IMG/VR virus record: IMGVR_UViG_3300028275_000006
Location: 124,001 to 188,000 of that record
Reading direction: 5' to 3' (one strand)
Length of the DNA: 64,000 nucleotides
Shown here: positions 4,164 to 22,647 of the stretch, piece after piece
How positions within the stretch are numbered: position 1 is the first letter of the stretch
How the letters are laid out: the number at the start of each line of letters is the position of its first letter
Position numbers and translations under genes: made by a program
The notes under the pieces: generated by a model
What the model was told of the DNA's origin: nothing
The model's database searches: none
The model's input: only the letters and a program-made list of their open reading frames with translations

Positions 4164-4165
4164 AA

Positions 4166-4463: not shown

Positions 4464-4537
4464 TGGTTGCGGGACCTGGAATCGAACCAGGATCTAGAGC
4501 TTATGAGACTCTTGAGTTACCGTTTCTCTATCCCGCG
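4464..4537 (-). tRNA. initiator-type tRNA-fMet(CAT)
   Basis: C1:A72 mismatch, loop CT-CAT-AA, CCA. Confidence 0.85.
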
Positions 4538-4541
4538 ATAA

Positions 4542-4872: not shown

Positions 4873-4874
4873 TG

Positions 4875-5447
4875 TTACAGTAAACCTTCTGCTTGCAGAA
4901 CTGCTTCTGTTTTGTCAGACAATTGGATAGTTGTCTGAACATTTAACTCTAGGATTTCATCCTGAAGTTTTTGTTTCTGCTTTTTAGCAGTTGCCACTCT
5001 ACGACGGAATCCGTCTAGATCTTCACGAGTGAGCACACTAGTGTCTACTGTGTCGTTGTAGCCATAGATGCTACGACGGTTTTCGCTTTTGTCGTTACGG
5101 ATCTTGTCCAAACGACCTGCTACAACCTTTGCGCTTTCGCGAACGGTCTTACTAGCCAATCCGTTGTAGAATTGGATTTGTTTTTCTAGATGTGCAACAT
5201 CGGCCAATCTAGTGTCGATTCTAACTTCTGTGTTAGCACCGCTGACACTTTTACGAATCTCGTAAAGTGCTTCCACTAACGCATCTCTGCGTGTAAGGTT
5301 GTCGCAGAGTGTTCCTGCAACTTTGGAAATTTCTTGTTCCGCTTCTTGGAACTCGTTGATTTTTACTGTGGTCTCAAACTGGAAACCTTTGACGGTATCG
5401 TTGATACTGTTCTGAAGTGCATTTGCCTTACGTAGGGAGATATTCAT
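4875..5447 (-). CDS. coiled-coil hypothetical protein
   Basis: Start MNISLRKANALQ with RBS; heptad-rich; loosely reminiscent of DIP1984-type proteins. Confidence 0.7.
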   Translation of the reverse strand: MNISLRKANALQNSINDTVKGFQFETTVKINEFQEAEQEISKVAGTLCDNLTRRDALVEALYEIRKSVSGANTEVRIDTRLADVAHLEKQIQFYNGLASKTVRESAKVVAGRLDKIRNDKSENRRSIYGYNDTVDTSVLTREDLDGFRRRVATAKKQKQKLQDEILELNVQTTIQLSDKTEAVLQAEGLL

Positions 5448-5513
5448 TTGTTTTTCCTTTAATGTTTCTATTATACAATCTTTTAAATCTAAATCAATGC
5501 CTTTTGGCAAAAC

Positions 5514-5589
5514 TGGAGCGGGAGACGAGGTTCGAACTCGCGACATTTACCTTGGCAAGGTAATGCTCTACCAACTGAGCTACTCCCGC
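5514..5589 (-). tRNA. tRNA-Gly(GCC)
   Basis: Canonical cloverleaf with CCA. Confidence 0.95.
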
Positions 5590-5637
5590 ATATGAAGAAC
5601 CTAAGGCAAAGTTTATAACTTATCCAAAGGCCATATA

Positions 5638-5713
5638 TGGTACACGGTACGGGAATCGAACCCGTCTTACTGACGTGAAAGGCCAGTGTCCTAAACCGAT
5701 AGACGAACCGTGC
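5638..5713 (-). tRNA. tRNA-Glu(TTC)
   Basis: Canonical cloverleaf with CCA. Confidence 0.95.
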
Positions 5714-5719
5714 ATTACT

Positions 5720-5795
5720 TGGCTCCCCAGGGTGGGATCGAACCACCGACACCCTGATTAACAGTCAGGTGCTACTACCGCTGAGCTACTAGGGA
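5720..5795 (-). tRNA. tRNA-Asn(GTT)
   Basis: Canonical cloverleaf with CCA. Confidence 0.95.
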
Positions 5796-5802
5796 ATAAA
5801 CT

Positions 5803-5877
5803 TGGTACCTGGTGACAGTTTCGAACTGCCGACCCTCTCGGTGTAAACGAGACGCTCTACCACTGAGCTAACCAGGC
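5803..5877 (-). tRNA. tRNA-Val(TAC)
   Basis: Canonical cloverleaf with CCA. Confidence 0.95.
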
Positions 5878-5887
5878 AAACTAACAT

Positions 5888-5964
<77 letters not shown>

Positions 5965-5969
5965 AATGA

Positions 5970-6045
5970 TGGAGCGGGAGGCGAGAGTTGAACTCGTCTA
6001 TTTCAGTTTGGAAGACTGACGTGTAACCACAAACACTTCACCCGC
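5970..6045 (-). tRNA. tRNA-Gly(TCC)
   Basis: Cloverleaf, loop CT-TCC-AA, CCA. Confidence 0.9.
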
Positions 6046-6051
6046 ATATTT

Positions 6052-6135
6052 TGGTGCCCCAGGAGAGACTCGAACTCTCACGGCTCTCGCCACTGGCTTC
6101 TAAGACCAGCGTGTCTACCATTCCACCACCAGGGC
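6052..6135 (-). tRNA. tRNA-Leu(TAG)
   Basis: Class II cloverleaf with long variable arm, CCA. Confidence 0.95.
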
Positions 6136-6136
6136 A

Positions 6137-6940
6137 TTAACTGACAATACTATTTAAGTATTCCTGAATTGTCGTTGCAATTTTTTCTTGCACAGACAAT
6201 TTAATTTTTGCATTCTCACCATTAGCACTCATATACTGTTTTCCGTATTCAGTACAATCTATACCAGTGTGCATAAACTCTTTAAAAATTTCTGAGTTGT
6301 CAGGATTAGGATCTCCAAACCTAACAGTCGTCCATTTAATATTTTGAGAATCTAAAAACTTAATTAACATATTGTAACCATTTCTATGTCTACGAATATG
6401 CCAATCTTTGCTTTGACTTTTTTGAAAAGCAATACCGTTTAATCGCTTTTTATGAACTTCAATTGGATATCTATCTGGATTCCATTCTCCGTCTACATAA
6501 TTTTCACGTTCAAATACATATCGTTGATTGTTATATTTGAAACTGTGTGCTATATGACTAAACGTGTAATCTGTAACTAATACATGATCCGGTTTAGGAT
6601 TCTCTGCTAGGTACTGTTTTAATCTTTTGTGATGACCTATAAAATGTCCACCGTTAATAGATATATTAACTACATTGGAAACATTTAAGAAATTAGGCCA
6701 TGCGGCTTTTTGTTCTTCTTCCCATAGATAATGCCAAACAACATTTTCCATATTGCCATTGGGCATAGGTGTTGTAACATTGTTTTCTTTTCTATGTTTT
6801 AGATACCATTTAAAAACACTTCTAAAATCATTATGGAAACGTAGACTCCAAGTCCTCGGAGCATCGTCGTTGACTATGTCACCAGCCAAACAATTATTGC
6901 CATTACTTTGGCAATCTCCTAAAATTAAAAGTGTTTTCAT
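6137..6940 (-). CDS. hypothetical AT-rich protein with GDSL-like N-terminus, inserted in tRNA array
   Basis: 267 aa ORF; LILGDCQSNG resembles the SGNH block I motif. Confidence 0.65.
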   Translation of the reverse strand: MKTLLILGDCQSNGNNCLAGDIVNDDAPRTWSLRFHNDFRSVFKWYLKHRKENNVTTPMPNGNMENVVWHYLWEEEQKAAWPNFLNVSNVVNISINGGHFIGHHKRLKQYLAENPKPDHVLVTDYTFSHIAHSFKYNNQRYVFERENYVDGEWNPDRYPIEVHKKRLNGIAFQKSQSKDWHIRRHRNGYNMLIKFLDSQNIKWTTVRFGDPNPDNSEIFKEFMHTGIDCTEYGKQYMSANGENAKIKLSVQEKIATTIQEYLNSIVS

Positions 6941-6954
6941 ATTAATAGTTATCT

Positions 6955-7031
6955 TGGCGCACCGTAGGGGACTTGAACCCCTGGCCTCCGACGTGACAGG
7001 CCGGCGCTCTGACCAACTGAGCTAACGGTGC
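6955..7031 (-). tRNA. tRNA-Asp(GTC)
   Basis: Canonical cloverleaf with CCA. Confidence 0.95.
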
Positions 7032-7036
7032 AAATT

Positions 7037-7116
7037 CTATTCTGAAACACACTAACCAACTACCAGAAGCATTTATAATGCCGTTATTCGGTTCGAGCTA
7101 ATGTGTTTTAGAATAG
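7037..7116 (-). ncRNA. candidate stem-closed ncRNA C
   Basis: 20-nt terminal stem CTATTCTAAAACACATTAGC/GTTAGTGTGTTTCAGAATAG with one A:C mismatch. Confidence 0.5.
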
Positions 7117-8005
7117 TGCTAACGCTGAGATTATACGTTAGCCAATAGTGCCTCTAGCATTATAGTCAGCCTTGCGAGCCAACCTTCTCTAGACATCCAC
7201 ATAAGCCATTACTGTACCTATGTCCACTATCAGCATCGCCGTTTTTAAAGACAGGCAGTAGTCTTGTCGCCATATGCTATTCTACGCTATCTACTCCGTT
7301 GACCTTGCGAGCCATTCAGCGGCGCTAACCACTTACGAAACTTCCAGCATAAACAGATTTCACCTTGCGAGCTACGTCTGACTCGATTACCTTGCGGCTC
7401 GAGTATTAGATGCTTTTCACATATGACCGAGGCAGTCTTTGCATTTTATAATCGATAGTTGGGATCGAACCAACAGTCCATTGCTTAAGAGGCAATTGCG
7501 TTACCATTACGCTATATCAAACCTACCGCGATGAGCTGCCTCTGTTGCTCAATAACCTTTTGGATTACTGAATACAACTCACCACATACCTTTTGTCTCG
7601 CGGACTACTCAGTGATATTTCACGATCAATGTCCTGCATCAAAACAGTCCACTAACCATTAATATTGCATACAAGCCCTTAGGAGCGACCCCTTGGACAA
7701 ATACACTACCCTTTCTCATACCAATTCGCAAGTTGGTTTTGTTAGGAAGTCAGCACCACCCGTTACTTTTCATGCACCCTGGTTCCCTTGCGGGCCAGTC
7801 GATACACATTCTTTCCCTAACACTTGCTTCATTGTTACATCCACCGGTCTTCTCAGTGAACGCTACCTCGCGGTAGTGAGCAGGCTTGTTTACATGAACC
7901 ATTACTGGCGGAGTTGCGTAGGCTTACCTCCTTTGGGTTGATCACTCAACTTATTCTTCGTCAACGGCGAACCGCCAACAGGATAATAAACTACCCTTAA
8001 ATTTT
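7115..8005 (-). ncRNA. giant structured ncRNA, GOLLD-like, containing a tRNA
   Basis: ~900 nt without credible ORF; many GNRA-capped hairpins (CTCGCAAGG x3, CCGCAAGG x2, CCGCGAG x2); inside a phage tRNA cluster; boundaries approximate. Confidence 0.7.
7450..7521 (-). tRNA. tRNA-Lys(CTT) embedded in giant ncRNA, no encoded CCA
   Basis: Intact D, anticodon (ATTGC-CT-CTT-AA-GCAAT) and T arms; weak acceptor stem. Confidence 0.8.
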
Positions 8006-8171
8006 TACCATTAAAAAATAACATTACACCCTATGGGATGAAACGTATTTCTGAGTGGAGTTCGATTCTCCTCATAAGCCATTGTTCACGGTTTTCTCAG
8101 AAGGGTAAGATGGCCTTATCCTTCATAAGTCTATGCGTCCATAGACGATACCCGTCAATGCTATTTCTTAA

Positions 8172-8257
8172 TGGTGGATGCGGCTGGAGTCGAACCAGCA
8201 GTGCCGTAAGGCGGCGGATTTACAGTCCACTGGGGTTACCAATTTTCCTACACATCC
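8172..8257 (-). tRNA. tRNA-Tyr(GTA)
   Basis: Class II cloverleaf with CCA. Confidence 0.95.
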
Positions 8258-8344
8258 ATATCTGCTTGAAATTTTTAAAGAACTAGGTTAATTTCTTAAC
8301 TAGTCTCTATTGTATATGAACTTTAGAAACTAGTCAAGACATTT

Positions 8345-8439
8345 TGGCAGTGAGTAAGGGATTCGAACCCTTGATCCCCGTTTTTGCAGGAATGCCTTCT
8401 TAGCAGGAAGGTGCCTTCGACCAGCTCGGCCAACTCACT
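8345..8439 (-). tRNA. tRNA-Ser(GCT)
   Basis: Class II cloverleaf with CCA. Confidence 0.95.
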
Positions 8440-8447
8440 ATATTTGT

Positions 8448-8476
8448 ATTATACGATCAACTGTTAAACAAGTCAA
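8448..8476 (-). promoter_or_regulatory. internal sigma70-type promoter in tRNA array
   Basis: TTGACT-17nt-TATAAT; a similar TTGACT/TACAAT site lies near 8310-8338. Confidence 0.75.
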
Positions 8477-8483
8477 CACCTTT

Positions 8484-8573
8484 TGGCCGAAGCGGTGAGA
8501 TTCGAACTCACGGACCCTTTCGGATCGTCTGTTTTCAAGACAGGTGCAATAAACCGGACTCTGCCACGCTTCG
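8484..8573 (-). tRNA. tRNA-Ser(TGA)
   Basis: Class II cloverleaf with CCA. Confidence 0.95.
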
Positions 8574-8619
8574 TTGTTTTACTTGTATAATTCGTTGTAG
8601 ATAGAATCTGCTACAAATG

Positions 8620-8697
8620 TGGTACCCCTGCTCCGATTCGAACGGAGAGAACTTCTCCTTTTGAGAGAGACGACTTTACCAATTTGTCCACAGGGGT
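8620..8697 (-). tRNA. tRNA-Leu(CAA), short variable loop
   Basis: Loop CT-CAA-AA, 6-nt variable region, CCA. Confidence 0.85.
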
Positions 8698-8702
8698 ATA
8701 TC

Positions 8703-8776
8703 TGGTGCTCAAGGAAAGAATCGAACTTTCGATTGTGTCGTACCAAGACACTGGTATACCATTTACCTACAAGAGC
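8703..8776 (-). tRNA. tRNA-Thr(GGT)
   Basis: Loop TT-GGT-AC, two acceptor mismatches, CCA. Confidence 0.8.
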
Positions 8777-8778
8777 CT

Positions 8779-8850
8779 TGGCGCCTCTGAGTAGATTCGA
8801 ACTACTATAACCTGGTTTAGAAGACCTGGCACTGCTCCATCAGCAGAGGC
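8779..8850 (-). tRNA. tRNA-Arg(TCT), reduced D arm
   Basis: 72 nt, loop CT-TCT-AA, CCA. Confidence 0.8.
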
Positions 8851-8851
8851 A

Positions 8852-8928
8852 TGGTACCCTTGGTTGGATTCGAACCTACACACAACGGATTTTAAATCCA
8901 TTCGCATTACCAATTAGCGTACAAGGGC
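8852..8928 (-). tRNA. tRNA-Leu(TAA), short variable loop
   Basis: Loop TT-TAA-AA, 5-nt variable region, CCA. Confidence 0.85.
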
Positions 8929-8935
8929 ATAATTA

Positions 8936-9011
8936 TGGTGCCGCCCCTTGGGATCGAACCAAGTTCCTCGGTGCTTCAAACCGGTGCAATGACCACATTT
9001 GCTAAAGCGGC
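8936..9011 (-). tRNA. tRNA-Phe(GAA)
   Basis: Cloverleaf, loop TT-GAA-GC, CCA. Confidence 0.9.
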
Positions 9012-9017
9012 GATATT

Positions 9018-9092
9018 TGGGGTGAAGCCGGGAATCGAACCCTGCCTTACTGTTTCACAGACAGCCGTGCGGACCACTACACTAGCAACACC
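9018..9092 (-). tRNA. tRNA-His(GTG)
   Basis: G-1:C73, loop CT-GTG-AA, CCA. Confidence 0.9.
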
Positions 9093-9094
9093 AT

Positions 9095-9171
9095 TGGCCG
9101 GCCCTGAGAGACTCGAACTCCCAACCTCCAGTTTCGAAGACTGGCACTCTAATCCATTGAGTTAAGGACCG
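9095..9171 (-). tRNA. tRNA-Arg(TCG)
   Basis: Cloverleaf, A20, CCA. Confidence 0.92.
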
Positions 9172-9178
9172 TTAAAAT

Positions 9179-9252
9179 TGGCAGGCCTACCAGGACTCGA
9201 ACCTGGAACGACTGAGTCAAAGTCAGTTGTGTTACCATTACACCATAGGCCA
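9179..9252 (-). tRNA. tRNA-Gln(TTG)
   Basis: Cloverleaf, weak 1:72 pair, CCA. Confidence 0.93.
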
Positions 9253-9262
9253 ACAGATTGAA

Positions 9263-9475
9263 TTTGTAAGTAGTTGCCCCATCGTTATAGCAACCATTCA
9301 CCCATGTATATAAAGCCGGCTGGGACTCGGTACGTCACTTGGGATACTAGTCCAGTTAGCAACCAATCTGCAGGGATCTTCCGATCCCCCGGGAGTTGAA
9401 CCCGTCCCCTTTTACTATTAAGGTAGTTCGAACTTACCTACAATAGCGTGACATTCTCTTGCTGACACTTACAAA
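9263..9475 (-). ncRNA. candidate stem-closed ncRNA E
   Basis: Terminal TTTGTAAGT/ACTTACAAA; internal CGGG-TTCAACT-CCCG T-arm-like hairpin and GGGATCGGAAGATCCC hairpin. Confidence 0.5.
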
Positions 9476-9478
9476 ACT

Positions 9479-9553
9479 TGGTGCCCCAGGATGGAATCGA
9501 ACCACCACACCCTGCTTACAAAACAGGACCTCTACCACTAAGGATACAAGGGC
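9479..9553 (-). tRNA. tRNA-Thr(TGT)
   Basis: Cloverleaf with CCA. Confidence 0.92.
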
Positions 9554-9558
9554 AAAAT

Positions 9559-9636
9559 TGGTCTCCACGGTACGATTCGAACGTACAGCCTCCTGACTCC
9601 AGATCAGGCCGTCTACCAGATTGACATTACGCAGAG
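9559..9636 (-). tRNA. tRNA-Pro(TGG) variant with C33 and A37
   Basis: Stem CCTGA/TCAGG, loop TC-TGG-AG, CCA. Confidence 0.75.
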
Positions 9637-9646
9637 ATAAAAATAA

Positions 9647-9722
9647 TTGCGACCGAAGGACTCGAACCTTCGCGGTAATCTAGAATGCCCCGGCAAGGCC
9701 GGTTAACCCACCATTGTCGCAA
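9647..9722 (-). pseudogene. tRNA-like element without CCA or valid anticodon arm
   Basis: TTGCGAC/GTCGCAA stem plus perfect T arm GAAGG-TTCGAGT-CCTTC. Confidence 0.5.
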
Positions 9723-9725
9723 ATT

Positions 9726-9800
9726 TGGTGGAGGCCGAGGAAATCGAATCCTTCTAGACATCTTCCTTGCAAGGGAAGACCGTAGCCCACTACTGCCCCC
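9726..9800 (-). tRNA. tRNA-Ala(TGC), reduced D loop
   Basis: G3:U70, loop CT-TGC-AA, D hairpin GTAG-TGGG-CTAC, CCA. Confidence 0.8.
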
Positions 9801-9885
9801 AAATTGGTGTTAGTTTCTATACCACCCATTGAAACTAACAAACATTGAGAGAACATGGATGAACCCACAAGATCTCTATTTGCTC

Positions 9886-9960
9886 TGGTATAGCGTACGG
9901 GGATCGAACCCGCCTAGTCACCTTGAAAGGGTGATGACCTCCCCAGAAGTCGAACGCTAT
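9886..9960 (-). tRNA. tRNA-Glu(TTC), second copy
   Basis: Cloverleaf, loop CT-TTC-AA, CCA. Confidence 0.9.
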
Positions 9961-9966
9961 GTAAAT

Positions 9967-10040
9967 TGGTTCCTGGACCGAGAATTGAACTCAGAATGAC
10001 CGGTTATCAGCCGATTGTTATACCATTTAACTATCCAGGA
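9967..10040 (-). tRNA. tRNA-Ile(GAT)
   Basis: Cloverleaf with CCA. Confidence 0.93.
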
Positions 10041-10130
10041 ATAATACTATACAAAAAGAAACTAACGACAATGCGCTATGCACCCAGAGTCTATAGTTCC
10101 TGGCTGTGGTTAGTTTGTTTTTATACACTA

Positions 10131-10225
10131 CCATATGGAAGCACTCTTATGCCTTTTTCGTCATAAGATGGTGGCCCGTCCTTACTACTGACGCTATGCG
10201 ACCAGTTAAGAATGCTTTCATATGG
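10131..10225 (-). ncRNA. candidate stem-closed ncRNA B
   Basis: CCATATGAAAGCATTCTTA/TAAGAGTGCTTCCATATGG with one A:C mismatch; begins at the CCA of tRNA-Lys(TTT). Confidence 0.5.
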
Positions 10226-10297
10226 TAGGGGCACAGAGAATCGAACTCTGATTTACGGGTTAAAAGCCCGCTACTTTAACCATTAAGTTATACCCCC
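10223..10297 (-). tRNA. tRNA-Lys(TTT)
   Basis: Cloverleaf with CCA. Confidence 0.93.
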
Positions 10298-10300
10298 ATA

Positions 10301-10376
10301 TGGTCCCTGCTGTGAGATTCGAACTCACACCTCATTGATTAAGAGTCAAGTGCGCTACCATTGACGCTAAACAGGG
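10301..10376 (-). tRNA. tRNA-Lys(CTT)
   Basis: Cloverleaf with CCA. Confidence 0.92.
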
Positions 10377-10438
10377 TTGTACGTATTGATTTGATTTTAC
10401 GTGCCAACCCTAGACCATACGGGAGATCTAGAGTGACA

Positions 10439-10459
10439 CTAACGTTTAGCACGTTTCAT
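10439..10459 (-). CDS. micro-ORF MKRAKR-amber
   Basis: Strong SD AAGGAGAG; TAG stop leads into a long hairpin. Confidence 0.4.
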   Translation of the reverse strand: MKRAKR

Positions 10460-10471
10460 GCTACTCTCCTT

Positions 10472-10534
10472 TTAATATTTTTTCAAAACTTGATACAACA
10501 CGAACATTATAACTAACACTACAAGTACTGCCAT
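10472..10534 (-). CDS. 20-aa hydrophobic micro-protein MAVLVVLVIMFVLYQVLKKY
   Basis: SD TAAGGAG, single TM-like stretch. Confidence 0.55.
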   Translation of the reverse strand: MAVLVVLVIMFVLYQVLKKY

Positions 10535-10547
10535 AATATTCTCCTTA

Positions 10548-10637
10548 TGGTCCCCCGTTGAGGAATCGAACCTCATCCTGGACCTTATCTAGATTAATCG
10601 GTTATAAGCCGACCTGCTCTCCATGAGCTAACGGGGG
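10548..10637 (-). tRNA. tRNA-Ile(TAT) with 21-nt variable insertion
   Basis: Stem GTCGG/CCGAT, loop CT-TAT-AA, 90 nt, CCA. Confidence 0.8.
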
Positions 10638-10645
10638 ATATAACC

Positions 10646-10723
10646 TGGAGCAACGGGTCAGATTTGAACTGACGGTTTTACGGATTTGCAATCCGTTGCA
10701 TTGGGCCTCTCTGCCACCGTTGC
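10646..10723 (-). tRNA. tRNA-Cys(GCA)
   Basis: Cloverleaf, U73, CCA. Confidence 0.93.
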
Positions 10724-10728
10724 ATTAT

Positions 10729-10803
10729 TGGCGTACCCCCAGGGACTCGAACCCCGACTAGCAGTTTTGGAGACTGTCGTGCTGCCATTAACACTAGGGA
10801 TAC
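10729..10803 (-). tRNA. tRNA-Trp(CCA)
   Basis: Cloverleaf, G73, CCA. Confidence 0.93.
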
Positions 10804-15463: not shown

Positions 15464-15688
15464 TTATATCGGCACTTCGATCAGTTGAAAAATTCTCCAA
15501 TCTCTGCGATCAGCCACTTTTTTCTTCTTGTTCTCTTCCTGAACATACTTCAAGAAGCTCTGTGCCTGTTCCATAGTACCGTAGAAGATGTCATTACCGT
15601 AAGCATAAGTTCCTACCGAGCCGGTTTCGCCTTCCCAGTAATGTCCTACTGCGTAGTTAAACTGTTTTGCTTGTTTCTTCTTTGCCAT
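15464..15688 (-). CDS. hypothetical protein
   Basis: ORF in tandem run. Confidence 0.6.
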   Translation of the reverse strand: MAKKKQAKQFNYAVGHYWEGETGSVGTYAYGNDIFYGTMEQAQSFLKYVQEENKKKKVADRRDWRIFQLIEVPI

Positions 15689-15905
15689 GATTGTCTTTCA
15701 TATATGGCGGAATCTTTTCAGATTCTTCTTGTGTCATAAACCGTTGTGGTTCATGTGCCCAATGTGGCATCCATGACCAACCCCACGACTTCCAATATTT
15801 GGCAACTAAGTTATTAGCGATAAGAATACCGCCTAGGATTATCAAGAATCCTAAAACTGTTAAAACTGATCCGGCTAAAAATACTGCCGCCTGATCCATA
15901 TCCAT
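15657..15905 (-). CDS. small membrane protein
   Basis: One hydrophobic segment. Confidence 0.6.
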   Translation of the reverse strand: MDMDQAAVFLAGSVLTVLGFLIILGGILIANNLVAKYWKSWGWSWMPHWAHEPQRFMTQEESEKIPPYMKDNHGKEETSKTV

Positions 15906-15926: not shown

Positions 15927-16000
15927 TGGTGCGCTAGACAGGAATCGAACCTGCTATCGGGAGTTTAGAAGTCCCTGCCTATCCATTGAGCTTCAAGCGC
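15927..16000 (-). tRNA. Arg(TCT)-derived tRNA; best-paired register gives anticodon CTA
   Basis: 74 nt; GGGAC-TTCTAAA-CTCCC arm; A20; CCA. Confidence 0.7.
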
Positions 16001-16001
16001 A

Positions 16002-16211
16002 TTATCGTTCCCAAATTGTAGTCATGTTGAGCCAACGTGCTACGGGTTTAACTACCAGCGGAATCATTAAGCAAAGAATCCAAACCATTTGGATGTATTC
16101 TGCTTCTGTAAATTTGTAGGCAATGTTAGCAAAGCCAACTACTAGATAAATGGCGGACAGCCAAAAGAGGTAATGTCCGCCACTGCGTTGCCAAAGTAAA
16201 CGTTTTAACAT
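16002..16211 (-). CDS. small two-TM membrane protein
   Basis: Two hydrophobic segments. Confidence 0.6.
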   Translation of the reverse strand: MLKRLLWQRSGGHYLFWLSAIYLVVGFANIAYKFTEAEYIQMVWILCLMIPLVVKPVARWLNMTTIWER

Positions 16212-16212: not shown

Positions 16213-17013
16213 TTACTTACCGTTGGTAGTAACAGTAGGAGTTACAACACCGTTGATAACCAAAGTTTGACCTTTGAAGTTGGCAATAGCATCGGGCAAC
16301 TTACGCATGGCTTCTGCTTCTGCCTCCGCCTTCAACAATGGAATTGCCATCGGATTGGCCTGCATCGATTCGTTACGTTTCTTAGCAGTAGCAACTTTGA
16401 CTTCTTCGGTCTTGTACTCGTTCTTGGCTTTGACCAATTCGTTGGCGCTGGCTACAACAGAGTCTGCAGGCACAATGTTACGAATAAGAACTTGTCCAAT
16501 TACAATAGTACCATCCAACTTTTCTTCAGCCAGTGTACGAGTAACTTGTTCTTTGATTTCAGTTTCCATTGCTTGACGTGCATCACCCATTTCCAATGCT
16601 TCATACTTACGTGCGGCTTTGTAGATAGCATTACGTGAAGCATTAAAGATGTAATTATACATCAAGTAAACATCGCCATTATGACTAGCGTGGAATGATT
16701 TATTTTTTGTATTATAAATCTCGGCCACTTGTGCTTGATTGATATTATAAGTAACCAACGCATCAAAGTCCTTCATTGTGCTATTATCTTTAGCCAATGG
16801 AGTCATGTCTTCAACTTTGACACTAATTTCCTTAGTTGGGAATGTAAGTACATCGCCGATAATAGTTTGGTTAAACGAACCAGGAAGCAATTCCTCATTC
16901 TTGACCTGCTTGTCAAAACCGACACGGAGACCAACTTCACCAGTTTCGATACGAGTACAACCCGTTGCCAAAACTGCGGCGGCAAGAATAGAGAGAGTTA
17001 AAATACGCTTCAT
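16213..17013 (-). CDS. SPFH/band 7 (prohibitin-like) lipoprotein
   Basis: Lipobox LATGC; RIETGEVGLRV SPFH start; coiled-coil tail. Confidence 0.85.
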   Translation of the reverse strand: MKRILTLSILAAAVLATGCTRIETGEVGLRVGFDKQVKNEELLPGSFNQTIIGDVLTFPTKEISVKVEDMTPLAKDNSTMKDFDALVTYNINQAQVAEIYNTKNKSFHASHNGDVYLMYNYIFNASRNAIYKAARKYEALEMGDARQAMETEIKEQVTRTLAEEKLDGTIVIGQVLIRNIVPADSVVASANELVKAKNEYKTEEVKVATAKKRNESMQANPMAIPLLKAEAEAEAMRKLPDAIANFKGQTLVINGVVTPTVTTNGK

Positions 17014-17022: not shown

Positions 17023-17199
17023 TTAAAATAAAATTACGATTGCTGTCATCACCATTAGTGCTAACAGTGAAACAATTATACTATAGGCCAATGACTTTGT
17101 CAATGACCAACGCTCCTTGCCCTCCATTTTCCTCCAGGTAGTAATACCTAAATGGATCAGGACGGCAAGGATTGCAAAGACTAGCCAAAGTCTAATCAT
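17023..17199 (-). CDS. 58-aa two-TM protein (not in ORF track)
   Basis: MIRLWLVFAILAVL...; overlaps rIIB stop; contains consensus promoter 17075-17103. Confidence 0.6.
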   Translation of the reverse strand: MIRLWLVFAILAVLIHLGITTWRKMEGKERWSLTKSLAYSIIVSLLALMVMTAIVILF

Positions 17200-17993
17200 T
17201 GTGTTACCTTAAGAGCGGCATCGACTGCGGCCTTAACAGCGGCATCCAACTGCTCTTGTGTGTAGGCTTCATCCTGGACAGGTGCTTTGAAAGCATCGTC
17301 TGGATGTACGCCCAATTCACCAATAACTTCGTAGCGGCAAGCACGACCCTTAGACGCATTGTAGTCAGTAGGAATGCTTACAACATCACGTGGATTGATC
17401 TTAAGGATCACTGTACGTTCACCACCAAAGTGGTCCAAGTACTCACGTGAGCAGAAGTGCAGACCAGAACTACAAGTGTTTTCGGCCTTGTCGTCAACTT
17501 GGTTGCGCTCCATTTCAACAATCTGTCCAACAGAGTTATCCATTGTACCACTGTGGCAATCCTTATAGTCCTTACGAACTTTCTTGTATGCCAAGAAGTG
17601 ACCGTCATTGGTAATTGGCAAATTACCCTTTTCCAAAAACTTGTACAGTTCTGTAACAGCACGATGACTTGGGTTGCTCATCAAGTTCTCCATAAACTGA
17701 ACCATAGGCTCAATTGGGAAACCATCTTGGTACATAGAAATAATTCTATCTGCCAATGTGTTGTGGAACTCTTGTCCCTTCCAGTAGAACTTGTCTCCTT
17801 GGATAGCGATGTTACCAGCACCATATTCGAGCACAATTTTCTTTGGCTCAATTACTTCCTGTACTGTGTCCCAGTCACCTGTCTTAATTGCTTCTTTGAC
17901 TTTCTCATAGGCAATATGAGTAGAAGTAATTGTATGTGGATTGTTGTTAATTACAACAACAATATTTTTGCCTTGAATCAAATATGGAAACAT
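17196..17993 (-). CDS. rIIB: rIIB-like protein
   Basis: LPITNDGHFLAYKKV, CSSGLHF, KINPRDVVSIP, KGRACRYEV; adjacent to rIIA. Confidence 0.9.
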   Translation of the reverse strand: MFPYLIQGKNIVVVINNNPHTITSTHIAYEKVKEAIKTGDWDTVQEVIEPKKIVLEYGAGNIAIQGDKFYWKGQEFHNTLADRIISMYQDGFPIEPMVQFMENLMSNPSHRAVTELYKFLEKGNLPITNDGHFLAYKKVRKDYKDCHSGTMDNSVGQIVEMERNQVDDKAENTCSSGLHFCSREYLDHFGGERTVILKINPRDVVSIPTDYNASKGRACRYEVIGELGVHPDDAFKAPVQDEAYTQEQLDAAVKAAVDAALKVTQ

Positions 17994-17994
17994 T

Positions 17995-20157
17995 TTAAAC
18001 ACCTTTCTGTGTGTCAATCAAATTAACGTACTCAGCAACTTCATGATTTGGCGCACTACGCAAGTATGCCAACAACGGATAACGCTTACTAATGGTTGCA
18101 CATTCATCAGTAAACTTCTGCACTTGAGCTTCTGGACTAAAGGTTACACCAGGAGCATAACGATTGCACAAACGCTTCAAACTTTGTTCACTGTACTTAA
18201 TCTTTTCATAGCCCTTGAACTGTTTTACCAATTCAACATACGGACTATTTTTGTTAGTAACATTAAACATGATGCTTTCATTATACTGCAACAGGTTGAA
18301 ATTGTCAACAGCCTGCAATACCAAACTCATAACAAGTTTATTATCAATTGGCTTGCTCAAAACACTAACAATGTGCTCTTCAATGTTGACCCAATTCTTT
18401 TGAGTCTTAATAAACTCAATGTCGCCTTTACGCACACCGTAGATTGTAGTCTTCAAACCAGTTAAACCACAGTCTTTCAAATCGTTGTAAAACTCTTTGA
18501 CGTTGCTCATACCATACTTACTTTGAACTTCAAAACCGCTCAAAGGCAAGTAGTAGTAAGTAGTAGCATCATCAAAACTGTCAGCCTTACCAGCATCACG
18601 CCAAACCATTTCGCGTTCACGATAGTAGCCACCTGTGCCACGTTCTTGCAAACACAAGATTGTAACGTTCTTTGCCAAACCAACTTGACGTTCTTTCTTC
18701 GACAACGAACTGGCTTTTACAATACGATCCTCTGGAGGATTAGCAATAGCCTTAAAGAACGCCTTAGTGTTCATGACTTTGTCTTTGTTTAATTTATCTA
18801 AGACAAAGACTGTAGCACTATTGTCTGGCTTAGTTTCACGATAGTGGAACTTGGCACGTTCAAGGGCACCGATATTGGTATCATTAACGATAAACTGTAC
18901 ACGGTCCTCTACAGTAATGCCCCAGTAGGCAAACATATCGTAATGCCCTTGAGCGTTCTTGTTATCACTGTATTGTGTGTCAGCCTTACGGTTAGGATAT
19001 GCCTTAGTGTGCTTGGCATAGTTAAAACCTCTGATAACGATGTTGTATTTCTTAGCAAGATCTTCAACACCCATTTTGAAAGTCTTAGTACCGCCGTAAC
19101 GGCTGTCATCGAATGTAGACAGGTTAGTGTCTGCTACATACTTCTTAACCGCCGCTTGCCACAAACCATTATGATACTTCTTAGTCAAGAAGATAGCACG
19201 ATCCCACAGGTTAGGAATAGCATCTGCTTCTTTGGCTACGTGAACAGCCAACTGAGCATTTACTGCCTCTAACTTGCGCTTGATGGCATCTACAGTCTGA
19301 GGAATGTATGACAAACCTTCACGGCTTGCTTGGAAGTCTAATTCGCCAATAGCAAAGTGCATTTCCAAACCACAGTTCAACAACAGGCGCAATTCGCCCA
19401 TAGCCTGTTCTGTGTTAGGAACATCTATAGGATAGGCAATATTGCCCATGATGGCTACAGCACGACGGTGTCCGTCTGTGTATGAGTGAACGCCTGGAAT
19501 GATATCCTTAGCATCATATTCTACATCACGGAAACGGAAGTCGCTGACACCGCTGATAACTGGGCGCAGAGCAAAATAAGTGTAGACATATCGTGCTTCT
19601 TCTTGGAACTTACTAAAGTCCCAACGGTCACTGACTGAGAATTTAACTTCGACACCGTCGGGTTCGCTGGTTTGTTCTTCACCCATCTTGGCAATACTAG
19701 GCACACCTGCTTCGTTAATAAAAGCAGAGTAAACACCTTTAACGCCGTCTTTGATTGCGGTTACCGTGAAGTTATCTGTATAACTAAAAGGACTCTTAGA
19801 ACCCAAACCTAATGCGCCGATAAAATCGTTGCTGTTGGTCTTAGTACTTTCAAAGTATGTGGTATAGATGTTTGTAACTTGTTCGTGGCTCAAACCAGTA
19901 CCATAGTCACGAATACTAAACCAAGGTTCCAATTGGTTGGGCAAGTGTACATCAAAAGGAGTATCTTGTTTGCCTGCGGCAGTATGGCTATCTACTGCGT
20001 TACAACTCAGTTCACGGATGATAGCACGGATCTTGTTAGCATACAAGCCTGAACTCAAAATGTTAAATGCCTTAGCAGAGTTGCGAATACGGAACTCGCC
20101 CACTTCACTTACATTACTCAAAATTGCTTCGTTTTGCGGAGCATTGTTAATAATCAT
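17995..20157 (-). CDS. rIIA: rIIA-like protein (GHKL ATPase N-domain)
   Basis: AIIRELSCNAVDSH, IRDYGTGL, GALGLGSKS. Confidence 0.9.
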   Translation of the reverse strand: MIINNAPQNEAILSNVSEVGEFRIRNSAKAFNILSSGLYANKIRAIIRELSCNAVDSHTAAGKQDTPFDVHLPNQLEPWFSIRDYGTGLSHEQVTNIYTTYFESTKTNSNDFIGALGLGSKSPFSYTDNFTVTAIKDGVKGVYSAFINEAGVPSIAKMGEEQTSEPDGVEVKFSVSDRWDFSKFQEEARYVYTYFALRPVISGVSDFRFRDVEYDAKDIIPGVHSYTDGHRRAVAIMGNIAYPIDVPNTEQAMGELRLLLNCGLEMHFAIGELDFQASREGLSYIPQTVDAIKRKLEAVNAQLAVHVAKEADAIPNLWDRAIFLTKKYHNGLWQAAVKKYVADTNLSTFDDSRYGGTKTFKMGVEDLAKKYNIVIRGFNYAKHTKAYPNRKADTQYSDNKNAQGHYDMFAYWGITVEDRVQFIVNDTNIGALERAKFHYRETKPDNSATVFVLDKLNKDKVMNTKAFFKAIANPPEDRIVKASSLSKKERQVGLAKNVTILCLQERGTGGYYREREMVWRDAGKADSFDDATTYYYLPLSGFEVQSKYGMSNVKEFYNDLKDCGLTGLKTTIYGVRKGDIEFIKTQKNWVNIEEHIVSVLSKPIDNKLVMSLVLQAVDNFNLLQYNESIMFNVTNKNSPYVELVKQFKGYEKIKYSEQSLKRLCNRYAPGVTFSPEAQVQKFTDECATISKRYPLLAYLRSAPNHEVAEYVNLIDTQKGV

Positions 20158-20197
20158 CTTTAGCCTTTCTGCGCCTAGTTGTTTACTGTATGTGTAT

Positions 20198-20226
20198 ATT
20201 ATAGCAAATGAACTGTGGTCTGTCAA
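20198..20226 (-). promoter_or_regulatory. sigma70-type promoter for rIIA
   Basis: TTGACA-17nt-TATAAT. Confidence 0.85.
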
Positions 20227-20552: not shown

Positions 20553-21632
20553 TTAAAAAGCGTCCCAGTAAGAGTAAGTCTTCTCTTTAACTTTGGTAAG
20601 GATAAGGCTTGCACCTTCCTTGTTAGTGAACACGTACTTGGTACCATTGTCATCAATCTTCTTCAACTCGTCCGGAGTGAATCGGATACCCTGCCAATCC
20701 CAATCTTCGTCACCAGTTTCTTCGTCACGTTCAATAACCTTGTAAGAAATGTTGACATTCTTGTTAAGAGGATTGCCTTCCCATTCCTTGTCTTCAAAAT
20801 TGTTTTCTTTGACTTCTTCGCCATTGATAACCAACTTGATTGCATAACGAGAAGTCGAACCGTATTCTGGTTTGGCATTCAGCATAGTCATTGCTTCCTG
20901 CGGAGTTTCGTCGAAACGATTCATTTCTTCAACCAATGCCTTCAGCATGTCAAAGTTGAATTGGTCAAACGTACCAGCAATACCTACAATCTTTTCAATG
21001 TGTTCTTTGTTTTGAAGATTGTCCATGCAGTATTCACGAATGAAGTCTGCATCCAAGCCCTTATACTCAAGGCTGTAATAAACACGACCAGGACGATTAC
21101 GCATATGGCTATTAACACGCCATTTGTCGTTACAAGTAAGCACAAACAACTTTTTGGTTGGGTACACACCGTCCAGCAGAGTCAGCATCTGTTCTTGCTC
21201 GTGTTCATCATAGACTTTTTCAAATTCATCAAACACTACAATTACAGGTTGTTCAATACTTTGAATGAACGCATTGAATTGGTCTCCACACCAAGGAGCA
21301 TTGATTACAATAGTAGGAATACCTTTGTCATATCCCTTGACAGAAAGCATCTTAGCCAATAGTGTTTTGCCAGAACCTTTTTCACCAGTAAGCATTACGC
21401 CAGTAGTACTGGGACGATCCTCAAACGCATAAAGAATACGGTCGGCACGTTTGTTTGTATCGCCGTAAATCTTGCCTTTGATTTCGAACTTGTCAATTGT
21501 TTCAAGAAACAACTGCCCAGACATCTCGTCCTTTTTAACGACATAGTTACCAGCCGGCAACTTCTCTTGAATATCAAGTGCTTCTTTTTTGGATACTCGG
21601 TAAGTGCTACCTTGCTTTAGGAAATAGGTCAT
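20553..21632 (-). CDS. AAA+ ATPase
   Basis: Walker A GEKGSGKT, Walker B VVFDEFEK, NRPGR; promoter 21669-21697. Confidence 0.9.
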   Translation of the reverse strand: MTYFLKQGSTYRVSKKEALDIQEKLPAGNYVVKKDEMSGQLFLETIDKFEIKGKIYGDTNKRADRILYAFEDRPSTTGVMLTGEKGSGKTLLAKMLSVKGYDKGIPTIVINAPWCGDQFNAFIQSIEQPVIVVFDEFEKVYDEHEQEQMLTLLDGVYPTKKLFVLTCNDKWRVNSHMRNRPGRVYYSLEYKGLDADFIREYCMDNLQNKEHIEKIVGIAGTFDQFNFDMLKALVEEMNRFDETPQEAMTMLNAKPEYGSTSRYAIKLVINGEEVKENNFEDKEWEGNPLNKNVNISYKVIERDEETGDEDWDWQGIRFTPDELKKIDDNGTKYVFTNKEGASLILTKVKEKTYSYWDAF

Positions 21633-21712
21633 GTGATCTTTCTATGAAATAAAACTGCGATACTGTGTATTATAGGCTCGGACAGGGCATCTGTCAATGT
21701 GTTTGGTAAAAT

Positions 21713-21735
21713 AAAAAAGGGCCCGAAGGCCCTTT
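21713..21735 (-). terminator. terminator after tmRNA
   Basis: AAAGGGCC-TTCG-GGCCC hairpin followed by T6. Confidence 0.8.
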
Positions 21736-21739
21736 GGTT

Positions 21740-22066
21740 GTTTGGGTTACAAGGTAAGTCCTACCCCGGAGTTGCAGTTTCTTAGGCTGCTACTAGACCA
21801 TTGTCGGCTGTGAAGCCTTCAACAGTGAAGTACTCAAATGTAGATGCGTTTGCATTTACTAGTTTTGCTTGATTTACGGTCATCGCCTACCGTGTTGCCG
21901 TCTCTACTATCTACCCCTGTCGAAACCATGGCAGGCCCATCATAAAAACACAATACCAAAGTAAATTTACAATGAATACCAAAGTAAATTTATGTCCTTA
22001 TGGTGGACCTGGCGGGAGTCGAACCCGCGTCCAGAAGTCCTTCGCTTTGAAGGGATTACAACAATT
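21740..22066 (-). ncRNA. ssrA: circularly permuted (two-piece) tmRNA
   Basis: Acceptor piece ending GGTTCGACTCCCGCCAGGTCCACCA (22001) precedes coding piece starting GGGCCTG (21938); G3:U70; tag frame 21782-21853 ANASTFEYFTVEGFTADNGLVAA*. Confidence 0.9.
21952..21992. repeat. 18-nt tandem direct repeat in tmRNA intervening segment
   Basis: AATACCAAAGTAAATTTA at 21952-21969 and 21975-21992. Confidence 0.9.
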
Positions 22067-22068
22067 CT

Positions 22069-22647
22069 TTAAACGCCTGCCTTTGCTAATGTGCCAAATA
22101 TCCAAGGTTTTGGATCTAAGTCAATTGTCCAAGATGTCGGTTCATTTCTCATATCTTTTTTGTACACAATATTTATTTGGTCGTGTGTTAGTTTGACTAA
22201 GAAGCCGTCTGTTAATTGTTTTAGATTAGCCTTAACTGTTGCGTAATCTACAAAGGCAACAGCGAATGTTCCTTTAATTTGGACTATCATTAAATGATTA
22301 AAAACTTTGTCTAGTGTAGTTCTTTGATTCTTACTTTCGTAAACATTTTTTAATTTAAGACTGATTGTCTTTTTAGGAGTTCCTGACTTTGCGTAGAACA
22401 AAGGTTCGTTGCCAGTTTTAACTTCTACGTCGCCATTGGTCCAATCGGTAAATTTTATATCGTAATCGCGAACGTCAGTCCACTCGATGTTCTTTTTATG
22501 ATTAGATAATTGCATTGCCGCAATAATGAATTTTTCTTTCATCATTCGATTTGTGGATTCATTTAATACTGTCTGATGACAGATGTTATTACAAGCATCT
22601 GAAAACTTGTCAATATCTACCCAATCTAAAAATTCATTGTACTGCAT
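22069..22647 (-). CDS. hypothetical protein, possible PD-(D/E)xK nuclease fold
   Basis: AT-rich; D..GDVEVKT motif. Confidence 0.55.
   Translation of the reverse strand: MQYNEFLDWVDIDKFSDACNNICHQTVLNESTNRMMKEKFIIAAMQLSNHKKNIEWTDVRDYDIKFTDWTNGDVEVKTGNEPLFYAKSGTPKKTISLKLKNVYESKNQRTTLDKVFNHLMIVQIKGTFAVAFVDYATVKANLKQLTDGFLVKLTHDQINIVYKKDMRNEPTSWTIDLDPKPWIFGTLAKAGV

What the first reader, a model, noticed from the sequence alone, without database searches (positions are those of the whole stretch)
15927..16000. Orphan Arg-type tRNA whose best fold presents a CUA (amber) anticodon
Seen: 74 nt, about 2 nt short. The register GGGAC-TTCTAAA-CTCCC gives 4 Watson-Crick pairs and a centred CUA. The Arg(UCU) register AGGGA/ACTCC has two mismatches and breaks the D stem. 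A20 (Arg identity) is kept. Inference: a 2-nt deletion turned Arg(UCU) into a potential amber suppressor or a dual-register tRNA. Genome-wide TAG recoding is not supported, so any role would be selective read-through.
Basis: partly seen in the sequence, partly recalled or inferred. Interest (0 to 1): 0.65.

Follow-up and report, generated by a model that had tools for sequence, protein, structure and literature searches.

The report
Jumbo-phage amber-suppressor-type tRNA(CUA)
This is a real, well-conserved phage tRNA gene whose anticodon reads the UAG stop codon; it belongs to a family already seen in other large phages that use the normal genetic code, and it did not arise from an arginine tRNA by a recent 2-base deletion.

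Summary
Window 15927-16000 (minus strand) holds a genuine 74-nt tRNA gene with encoded CCA and a CUA anticodon in a normal 7-nt loop (U33, A37, A38). ARAGORN and Rfam both call it.

The window is part of a 212-kb fragment of an uncultured jumbo phage that also carries 32 other tRNAs, a GOLLD RNA, a two-piece tmRNA and rIIA/rIIB.

The same tRNA occurs in more than 25 independent contigs. Compensatory changes in the anticodon and acceptor stems fit only the CUA register.

About 490 kb from two diverged lineages is read in the standard code. TAG is a rare but ordinary stop (3-9%), not conserved between orthologues, with no conserved read-through extensions.

More distant relatives carry normal-length (73-76 nt) CUA tRNAs with loop CUCUAAA and a non-Watson-Crick 31·39 position (the base pair closing the anticodon loop). 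Cultured standard-code phages do too: XacN1, Xoo-sp13, RAS14, Arash and cluster C mycobacteriophages. So CUA is ancestral in this family, and the Arg(UCU) look of this lineage is secondary.

The origin by deletion and the dual-register idea are not supported. It is a new member of a known kind; its target and the amino acid it carries remain unknown.

The parts
15927..16000 (-). tRNA(CUA) gene, 74 nt, CCA encoded
   Evidence: ARAGORN. Rfam RF00005 at 38.4 bits. Present in more than 25 contigs with compensatory changes.
15966..15968 (-). Anticodon C34 U35 A36 (TAG on the plus strand)
   Evidence: Sequence. Invariant in all intact copies.
15959..15975 (-). Anticodon arm GGGAC-UUCUAAA-CUCCC, with C31·C39 unpaired
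   Evidence: Compensatory pairs at 27:43 and 28:42. Position 31·39 is non-Watson-Crick in 19 of 21 family members.
16002..16211 (-). 69-aa membrane-like ORF whose TAA stop ends 1 nt before the tRNA
   Evidence: ORF list and sequence. No family match.
15657..15905 (-). 82-aa membrane-like ORF starting 22 nt after the tRNA, preceded by a purine-rich ribosome-binding stretch
   Evidence: The tRNA therefore sits inside an operon.
16213..17013 (-). SPFH/Band 7 lipoprotein gene upstream in the same transcription direction
   Evidence: PF01145 at 4.8e-16 and phrog_200.
17075..17103 (-). Consensus sigma-70-like promoter (TTGACA-17-TATAAT, 12 of 12) that could drive the SPFH, 69-aa ORF, tRNA and 82-aa ORF unit
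   Evidence: Pattern scan only. A consensus match, not evidence of function.
17196..20226 (-). rIIB (17196-18017) and rIIA (17995-20226) homologues
   Evidence: phrog_609 at 4e-82 and phrog_612 at 2e-138. The best cultured rIIA match is XacN1.
20553..21632 (-). AAA ATPase used as a synteny anchor to find relatives
   Evidence: phrog_2376 at 9e-97. It found 50 related loci.
21691..22093 (-). Phage two-piece (permuted) tmRNA, 5.7 kb from the tRNA; the two genes lie close together in many relatives
   Evidence: ARAGORN. Rfam tmRNA_permuted at 138 bits.
3147..10803 (-). Main array of 31 tRNA genes, including its own Arg(UCU) at 8779-8850; the CUA tRNA is not part of it

Best explanation
The locus is a functional tRNA gene with a CUA anticodon. 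It belongs to a family of amber-suppressor-type tRNAs carried by large and jumbo phages that themselves use the standard code.

Shown here:
- It folds as a canonical cloverleaf in the CUA register.
- It has been kept under purifying selection across phage lineages whose proteins are only about 53% identical.
- The phages do not use TAG as a sense codon.

Inferred:
- It is cut out of an operon transcript that also encodes small membrane proteins downstream of rIIA/rIIB.
- It is charged by a host synthetase. By E. coli identity rules U35 and A73 favour lysine, A20 and A73 allow arginine in this lineage, and glutamine mischarging is possible.
- It competes with release factor 1 at UAG codons.
- Only about 3-9% of the phage's genes end in TAG, so its own proteome is little affected. 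Read-through would fall mainly on host or rival-phage messages that end in UAG, or it would relieve ribosomes waiting at UAG.
- The unpaired 31·39 position and the A36-A37-A38 run are family-wide features of the anticodon arm. They probably tune UAG decoding.

The biological target is unknown, as it is for the related XacN1 suppressors.
For: It is a real tRNA in the CUA register:
-.
- Covariation gives 2 compensatory pairs in the anticodon stem and 3 pair types at 6:67 in the acceptor stem. The UCU register gets none.

Conservation:
- It is 95% identical between V1 and V3 phages, whose 144 reciprocal-best proteins have a median identity of 53%. That ties it for the most conserved of 33 tRNAs; most of the others are about 65-85% identical.
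- The flanking DNA cannot be aligned.
- There are 5 intact variants plus 10 more distant CUA relatives near the same ATPase.

Standard code:
- Code-11 ORF coverage is 0.91-0.96 over 212 + 112 + 169 kb. Reading TAG through gains no more than reading TGA through.
- The split-gene candidates are explained by overlapping frames.
- TAG stops swap with TAA/TGA between orthologues. The one shared TAG has unrelated extensions.

Family membership:
- blastn with a distant member (L085) hits CUA tRNAs annotated tRNA-Sup or tRNA-TERM in XacN1, RAS14 and DLP_5, and unannotated or mis-annotated ones in Xoo-sp13, Arash and about 97 cluster C mycobacteriophages.
- Most members share the anticodon arm RGAGC-CUCUAAA-ACUCY, and 31·39 is non-Watson-Crick in 19 of 21.

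Literature:
- XacN1 has two CUA suppressor tRNAs with no identifiable target among its 18 amber stops (PMC5852040).
- RsoM2USA has one CUA suppressor (PMC8504454).
- Identity rules are from PMC9976931.

No phage release factor or candidate aminoacyl-tRNA synthetase was found in the parts held.
Against: - There is no direct evidence of expression, charging or suppression.
- The window's own variant has a U6·U67 mismatch in the acceptor stem, A8 instead of U8, and a weak D stem. All three could lower activity.
- V3 phages end about 9% of their genes in TAG, including a 781-aa protein. An efficient suppressor would extend these.
- TAG-terminated genes show no excess of close back-up stops.
- TAG scarcity is also typical of phages and bacteria that have no suppressor.
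- CheckV rates the longest fragments 55-71% complete. Together they cover about 325 kb of an estimated 380 kb or so, so a small recoded block could have been missed.
Confidence: 0.6

Rival explanations
1. The tRNA serves true but local TAG recoding, or programmed read-through, of one or a few phage genes. These would lie in the unsampled part of the genome or be too short for my scan to see.
For: CheckV rates the records 55-71% complete. In recoded phages the recoded genes form blocks, and suppressor tRNAs go with recoding (bioRxiv 10.1101/2021.08.26.457843). TAG is depleted as a stop here: 3.4% of stops against about 30% of off-frame stop triplets.
Against: About 325 kb of the V1 phage and 169 kb of the V3 phage show no in-frame TAG in any gene with an orthologue. 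TAG ends conserved genes in V3. The complete XacN1 genome gave the same negative result in its authors' hands (PMC5852040).
Confidence: 0.1
2. The RNA is kept for a role other than decoding. Candidates are an RNase P/Z processing signal that splits the operon transcript, a decoy or antidote against a host tRNA-targeting defence, or a source of regulatory fragments. On this view the CUA anticodon is incidental.
For: It sits within 1 nt and 22 nt of the flanking ORFs, inside an operon. It has several non-standard features: A8, C13·A22 and an unpaired 31·39. No target codon could be found.
Against: The 7-nt loop, with U33, CUA and A37, stays fixed in 20 of 21 family members while the stems and acceptor sequences change freely. 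The one exception, phiM12, has UUA, which is also a stop anticodon. A processing signal or decoy would not need a stop-reading anticodon. The encoded CCA, G18G19 and the T loop are intact.
Confidence: 0.15
3. One reading: an Arg(UCU) tRNA that lost 2 nt and now reads UAG, or switches between UCU and CUA registers and still decodes AGA.
For: All annotated blastn neighbours of this variant are tRNA-Arg, and the five checked are Arg(UCU). The heptamer CUUCUAA of Arg(UCU) loops is present at positions 31-37. A20 is present. In variant V3 the UCU register also gives 4 Watson-Crick pairs. The phage's array Arg(UCU) has an abnormal D arm, and AGA is a common codon at 13.7 per 1000.
Against: Relatives of normal length already have CUA, and the nearest outgroup has a fully paired D stem using the same AGGC strand. 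The UCU register gets no covariation support and collapses in V4/V5. It leaves no nucleotide 26. In most relatives it would put C at position 33. No undeleted sibling exists in IMG/VR.
Confidence: 0.03

Closest known systems
CUA suppressor tRNAs of Xanthomonas jumbo phage XacN1 (two tandem genes; Yoshikawa et al. 2018, PMC5852040), with Xoo-sp13 and Stenotrophomonas RAS14
   Same: They are jumbo myovirus-type phages with standard-code genomes, dozens of tRNAs and a CUA tRNA with no identifiable target. Distant relatives of the window's tRNA (L064, L073, L084) share their anticodon arm RGAGC-CUCUAAA-ACUCC with C31·A39. XacN1 has a tmRNA about 1 kb away and gives the best cultured rIIA match.
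   Different: The window's lineage has loop UUCUAAA (U32), C31·C39, a 4-nt variable loop, 74 nt and a different acceptor stem. Overall tRNA identity to XacN1 is modest. The hosts differ, and the host here is unknown and freshwater.
CUA tRNA of cluster C mycobacteriophages (Bxz1/Catera type), annotated variously as tRNA-Arg, tRNA-Pyl or tRNA-OTHER
   Same: They share loop UUCUAA(C/A) with C31·C39, which gives the same Arg(UCU) versus CUA ambiguity. These phages also use the standard code and carry more than 30 tRNAs and a tmRNA (PMC4472892).
   Different: The acceptor and D arms are unrelated. The hosts are Actinobacteria. The genomes are about 155 kb.
Suppressor tRNA(CUA) of TAG-recoded phages (crAss-like, Lak; code 15)
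   Same: A phage-encoded CUA tRNA in a phage with many tRNAs. Borges et al. propose a path from stop-codon depletion, to gain of a suppressor, to recoding (bioRxiv 10.1101/2021.08.26.457843).
   Different: Here no gene uses TAG as a sense codon, no RF2 gene was found, and the standard-code-plus-suppressor state is stable across deeply diverged lineages rather than transitional.
Laboratory amber suppressors (E. coli supE, supF, Su7; phage T4 psu mutants)
   Same: The same CUA anticodon with U33 and A37-A38. The loop CUCUAAA of most family members equals the loop of tRNA-Trp(CCA) with C35 changed to U, or of tRNA-Lys(CUU) with U36 changed to A (my own knowledge).
   Different: Those arise by single anticodon mutations of known isoacceptors and are selected in the laboratory. 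This is a natural, conserved gene of unknown amino-acid identity with an unpaired 31·39.
Phage tRNA-Arg(UCU)
   Same: These are the nearest blastn neighbours of the window's variant, at 76-84% identity. They share a D-loop motif AAUGGAUA with A20, a T arm GCAGGUUCGA and the heptamer CUUCUAA.
   Different: In the structure that covariation supports, the anticodon is CUA, not UCU. The C35 determinant is lacking. The family as a whole does not keep A20.

Membership tests
tRNA (Rfam RF00005) | Cloverleaf with four helices, scoring above the curated threshold | tested here: met
   38.4 bits against a gathering score of 29. ARAGORN also calls it. 89.5% of pair cells are paired across 5 variants.
tRNA (Rfam RF00005) | Conserved elbow elements: G18G19 in the D loop, a UUCRA T loop and the G53-C61 pair | tested here: met
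   The D loop is AAUGGAU, the T loop is UUCGAUU and the T stem is GCAGG/CCUGU. A8 instead of U8 is atypical, but it is also seen in the phage Bobbio tRNA-Arg.
Amber suppressor tRNA | CUA anticodon centred in a 7-nt loop, with U33 and a purine at position 37 | tested here: met
   The loop is U32 U33 C34 U35 A36 A37 A38. The register is backed by compensatory changes.
Amber suppressor tRNA | Aminoacylation, and insertion of an amino acid at UAG in vivo | not testable with these tools
   This needs a reporter assay, an acid gel or mass spectrometry.
tRNA-Arg(UCU) | UCU anticodon in the structurally supported register, with the C35 identity determinant | tested here: not met
   In the UCU register 56% of cells pair and there are no compensatory pairs. 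In the CUA register the figures are 80% and 2 pairs. Position 35 is U.
tRNA-Arg(UCU) | A20 in the D loop (the main bacterial ArgRS determinant; PMC9976931) | tested here: inconclusive
   A follows G18G19 in V1-V5, L063, L065 and L070. It is U or C in L064, L073, L076, L085, XacN1, Arash and RAS14.
tRNA-Pyl (ARAGORN's label for any cta anticodon) | The unusual pylT architecture: 6-bp anticodon stem, 3-nt variable loop, small D loop without G18G19 and no T-psi-C motif (my own knowledge) | tested here: not met
   The sequence has a 5-position anticodon stem, a 4-nt variable loop, G18G19 and a UUCGA T loop. The pylS and pylBCD genes were not searched for.
Code-15-type recoding module (TAG read as sense in phage genes) | In-frame TAG codons inside conserved phage genes; coding density rises when TAG is read through | tested here: not met
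   The gain from TAG read-through equals that from TGA read-through, and no split genes were found.
Code-15-type recoding module (TAG read as sense in phage genes) | Phage RF2 or a dedicated aminoacyl-tRNA synthetase accompanying the suppressor (present in some recoded phages) | tested here: not met
   PF00472, PF00750, PF00152, PF00749 and PF00579 are all absent from G000, G001 and G002. The records are incomplete.
CUA tRNAs of standard-code large and jumbo phages (XacN1 type) | Homologous CUA tRNA, with a shared anticodon-arm signature, in a standard-code phage that has a large tRNA set | tested here: met
   The chain of relatives runs V1-V5, then L076, then L064, L073, L085 and L084, then XacN1, Arash and Xoo-sp13. 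Position 31·39 is non-Watson-Crick in 19 of 21.

The most novel reading that the evidence does not exclude
The CUA tRNA and the phage tmRNA, which lie 0-6 kb apart in many lineages, may form a two-part module that keeps ribosomes moving at UAG. This would matter if RF1-dependent termination is limiting, or is deliberately impaired, in infected cells. The tRNA would read UAG through to the next RF2-readable stop, and the tmRNA would rescue and tag what still stalls. The family-wide unpaired 31·39 would be a tuning element for this job. That would give a function to the unexplained suppressor tRNAs of standard-code jumbo phages.
Probability: 0.1. Interest if true: 0.7.

Novelty: new member of a known kind. 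Interest (0 to 1): 0.35.

Why it matters
Why phages that use the standard code keep a stop-codon-reading tRNA is an open question, raised for XacN1 in 2018 and still unanswered.

This locus shows that such a tRNA has been held by purifying selection across a deep clade of uncultured freshwater jumbo phages. It ties those phages to cultured, tractable ones (XacN1, cluster C mycobacteriophages), where a knockout is feasible.

It also points to three family-wide features that could guide experiments: the CUA loop, an unpaired 31·39 and nearness to a phage tmRNA.

There is a practical point too. The built-in UCUA motif explains why annotation pipelines label these genes inconsistently as Arg, Pyl, Phe, OTHER or Sup.

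Tried and rejected
- **Single-sequence folding**. The minimum-free-energy structure is not a cloverleaf (z = -0.89). This is uninformative for a tRNA.
- **Megablast of 8 kb around the locus against 50,697 phage records.** No match.
- **blastn of the tRNA against E. coli genomes.** No match.
- **Pattern search of 185,579 prokaryote genomes for this tRNA.** No hit, so no host or prophage clue.
- **Pattern search for an undeleted Arg(UCU) sibling with the same D and T arms in IMG/VR.** None.
- **Paralogue search within the phage.** No tRNA is more than 71% identical.
- **Split-gene scan for in-frame TAG.** The five candidates are all explained by overlapping frames or by lying in the tRNA array.
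- **Conserved TAG read-through.** One orthologous TAG/TAG pair exists, but its extensions are unrelated.
- **Back-up stop enrichment after TAG.** None.
- **Searches for a release factor, ArgRS, class II Lys/Asp/Asn RS, Gln/Glu RS and Trp/Tyr RS in three records.** None.
- **phiKp24 'tRNA-Sup-TTA of arginine identity'** (PMC8386662). It is an 85-nt sequence scoring 26.8 bits, unrelated to this tRNA.
- **blastn of the nearest outgroup tRNA (L076).** It gave no isotype clue.
- **Tools left unused.** Complex prediction, structure prediction and the large protein searches were not needed.

Full report
**What is there.** The window is bases 124001-188000 of a 212,542-bp IMG/VR virus record that CheckV rates 55% complete, with 39.6% G+C. 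It is a jumbo-phage fragment. It carries:
- 33 tRNA genes
- a two-piece tmRNA
- a GOLLD RNA
- rIIA and rIIB
- an SPFH lipoprotein, an AAA ATPase and ClpP

At 15927-16000 on the minus strand, ARAGORN finds a 74-nt tRNA with anticodon cta. Rfam's tRNA model scores it at 38.4 bits, above the threshold of 29, in the same register.

Read from the sequence, the parts are:
- acceptor stem GCGCUUG/CUAGCGC, with one U·U mismatch
- A8 A9
- D arm GCUC-AAUGGAU-AGGC
- A26
- anticodon stem GGGAC/CUCCC, four Watson-Crick pairs plus C31·C39
- loop UUCUAAA
- a 4-nt variable loop
- a standard T arm
- A73 and an encoded CCA

That includes its count for the alternative UCU register, which has two mismatches and one wobble pair and leaves no nucleotide 26.

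**It is not an artefact.** Pattern searches found the same gene in 12 further IMG/VR contigs and 13 metagenome contigs. One of those copies is cut at a contig end and one has a broken 5' part. At least ten independent assemblies have the identical sequence.

**Which register.** Five distinct intact variants exist (alignment A3).
- In the CUA register the anticodon helix has two pairs with compensatory changes: 27:43 and 28:42 both switch between G-C and A-U. 80% of its cells are paired.
- The acceptor pair 6:67 appears as U·U, A-U, G-C and U-A.
- In the UCU register only 56% of the cells pair and no pair covaries. In variants V4 and V5 it keeps one Watson-Crick pair and one G·U pair.

Only variant V3 would allow both registers. 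The dual-register idea is therefore not supported.

**Genetic code.** Three stretches were examined: the 212-kb record, a further 112 kb of the same phage from a 270-kb contig, and 169 kb of a diverged relative (V3).
- All are densely coding in the standard code, with coverage of 0.91-0.96.
- Reading TAG through lengthens ORFs no more than reading TGA through does.
- Candidate split genes turned out to be overlapping frames, for example IscU/IscA.
- TAG ends about 3% of genes in V1 and 9% in V3. It makes up about 30% of off-frame stop triplets.
- Among 144 reciprocal-best protein pairs (median identity 53%), TAG stops swap freely with TAA and TGA. The one shared TAG is followed by unrelated sequence.
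- TAG-terminated genes have no excess of nearby back-up stops.
- No release-factor or relevant aminoacyl-tRNA synthetase gene was found.

**Selection.** Between V1 and V3 phages the flanking DNA cannot be aligned, yet the tRNA is 95% identical. That ties it for the most conserved of the 33 tRNAs; most of the others are about 65-85% identical. It is not a recent copy of any tRNA in the same genome, since none is more than 71% identical.

**Origin.**
- blastn of this variant against 50,697 phage records hits only tRNA-Arg where the hits are annotated. The five I checked are Arg(UCU).
- Against them, two nucleotides are missing 5' of the loop.
- The wider family contradicts it. Using the neighbouring AAA ATPase as an anchor I fetched 50 related loci. 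CUA tRNAs of 73-76 nt lie near it in many of them.
- The nearest outgroup, L076, scores 82.6 bits with a model built from V1-V5, against 55.6 or less for any non-CUA tRNA. It has the same acceptor stem, A8A9 and T arm, and a fully paired D stem GCCU/AGGC. Its variable loop is 5 nt, its loop is CUCUAAA and its anticodon is CUA.
- The AGGC strand is therefore not a truncated GAGC, and CUA was present before this lineage arose.
- A U33 followed by CUA always spells UCUA. The Arg look of V1-V5 comes from U32 and C31 on top of that.
- A20 is not conserved in the family.
- An older link to Arg-type tRNA bodies cannot be excluded. A distant member weakly matches Arthrobacter phage Arg(UCU), and some mycobacteriophage copies are annotated as Arg.

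**A known family.**
- blastn with a distant member (L085) hits CUA tRNAs in cultured standard-code phages. These are XacN1 (two in tandem, labelled tRNA-Sup), Xoo-sp13, RAS14, DLP_5, Salmonella phage Arash (mislabelled Phe) and about 97 cluster C mycobacteriophages.
- It also hits UUA tRNAs in Sinorhizobium phiM12-type phages and in Lak megaphages.
- Across 21 sequences, pairs 28:42, 29:41 and 30:40 are always Watson-Crick and show covariation. Position 31·39 is C·A, C·C or A·C in 19 of them.
- The XacN1 authors reported that reading through its 18 amber stops revealed no target (PMC5852040). RsoM2USA is described similarly (PMC8504454).
- The best cultured match to this phage's rIIA is XacN1.

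**Mechanism.** I conclude that this is a working tRNA that pairs with UAG.
- It sits 1 nt after a 69-aa ORF and 22 nt before an 82-aa ORF. A consensus sigma-70-like promoter lies 1.1 kb upstream. It is probably processed out of an operon transcript.
- Charging must rely on a host enzyme. Published identity rules (PMC9976931) make lysine (U35, A73) the default guess. Arginine (A20, A73, but no C35) is possible in this lineage.
- Because the phage rarely ends genes in TAG, read-through would mostly hit other messages.
- The purpose is not shown. The Borges model (stop-codon depletion, then gain of a suppressor, then recoding) describes this state but treats it as transitional. Here it is stable across deep divergence, which points to a use of its own.

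**A possible lead.** The tRNA is always apart from the main tRNA array but near the phage tmRNA. The spacing from the tmRNA in each lineage is:

| Lineage | Distance between the CUA tRNA and the tmRNA |
|---|---|
| V1 | 5.7 kb |
| V3 | 5.2 kb |
| L064 | 3.6 kb |
| L073 | 3.2 kb |
| L070 | 1.1 kb |
| XacN1 | about 1 kb |
| V5 | 0.7 kb |
| V4 | directly abutting |

Many of the loci were chosen through a gene that lies next to the tmRNA, so the linkage is suggestive only.

**Verdict.** It is a new member of a known kind and of moderate interest.

Noticed in passing
window 7122-7585 (-): GOLLD RNA (Rfam RF02032, 207 bits) with a tRNA-Lys(CUU) gene (7449-7522) embedded in it, inside the phage tRNA array.
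   Followed up: no
window 21691-22093 (-): Two-piece (permuted) phage tmRNA with a long tag, ANASTFEYFTVEGFTADNGLVAA. Relatives carry different tags (ANDNVYALAA, AKASTFKYMQVPASVALAAIDGEFALAA). It lies close to the CUA tRNA in many lineages.
   Followed up: partly
window 8779-8850 (-): The array's own tRNA-Arg(UCU) is 72 nt with a reduced D arm. It is the only ARAGORN tRNA that Rfam misses at its gathering score, yet AGA is a common codon in the phage (13.7 per 1000).
   Followed up: partly
window 10548-10637 (-): tRNA-Ile(UAU) is 90 nt, unusually long for an Ile tRNA. The V1 phage has no tRNA-Ala, whereas the V3 relative has one.
   Followed up: no
L110:4072-4492 (XacN1, AP018399, about 37201-37621): ARAGORN finds a permuted tmRNA (tag ANANTFDYALAA) about 1 kb downstream of XacN1's two CUA tRNAs. 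No such feature is annotated in the stretch shown, and the XacN1 paper text does not mention a tmRNA.
   Followed up: partly
L111:1496-1570 (Arash); L114:38-111 (Catera); other cluster C mycobacteriophage records: The same kind of CUA tRNA is annotated inconsistently: tRNA-Phe in Salmonella phage Arash, and tRNA-Arg, tRNA-Pyl or tRNA-OTHER in about 97 mycobacteriophages. Catera has GGAGC-UUCUAAC-CCUCC, with the same C31·C39 and the same UCU/CUA ambiguity.
   Followed up: partly
L011:7508-7699 and 7693-7766: In V3 phages the upstream 63-aa ORF ends with a TAG that lies inside the 5' acceptor strand (GCGCUAG) of the CUA tRNA gene itself.
   Followed up: no
L030:1270-1400 (-): A copy of the CUA tRNA whose 5' acceptor strand and D stem are replaced by unrelated sequence. 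ARAGORN does not call it. It may be a recombination scar or a pseudogene on a 1.9-kb contig.
   Followed up: no
window 50153-51161 (-), 24872-25489 (-), 23506-23817 (-), 12596-13135 (-): Host-like auxiliary genes: IscU plus two IscA/HesB-like Fe-S assembly genes, ClpP (which ends in a TAG-TGA tandem stop), an Hc1 histone-like protein and an AhpC peroxiredoxin.
   Followed up: no
G000 whole record (outside the window): Giant stop-to-stop ORFs of 4695, 3104 and 2135 aa. A UvdE-like gene (genome 95077-96204) ends in TAG and is followed by a 74-codon stretch containing several more in-frame TAGs; it looks non-coding.
   Followed up: no
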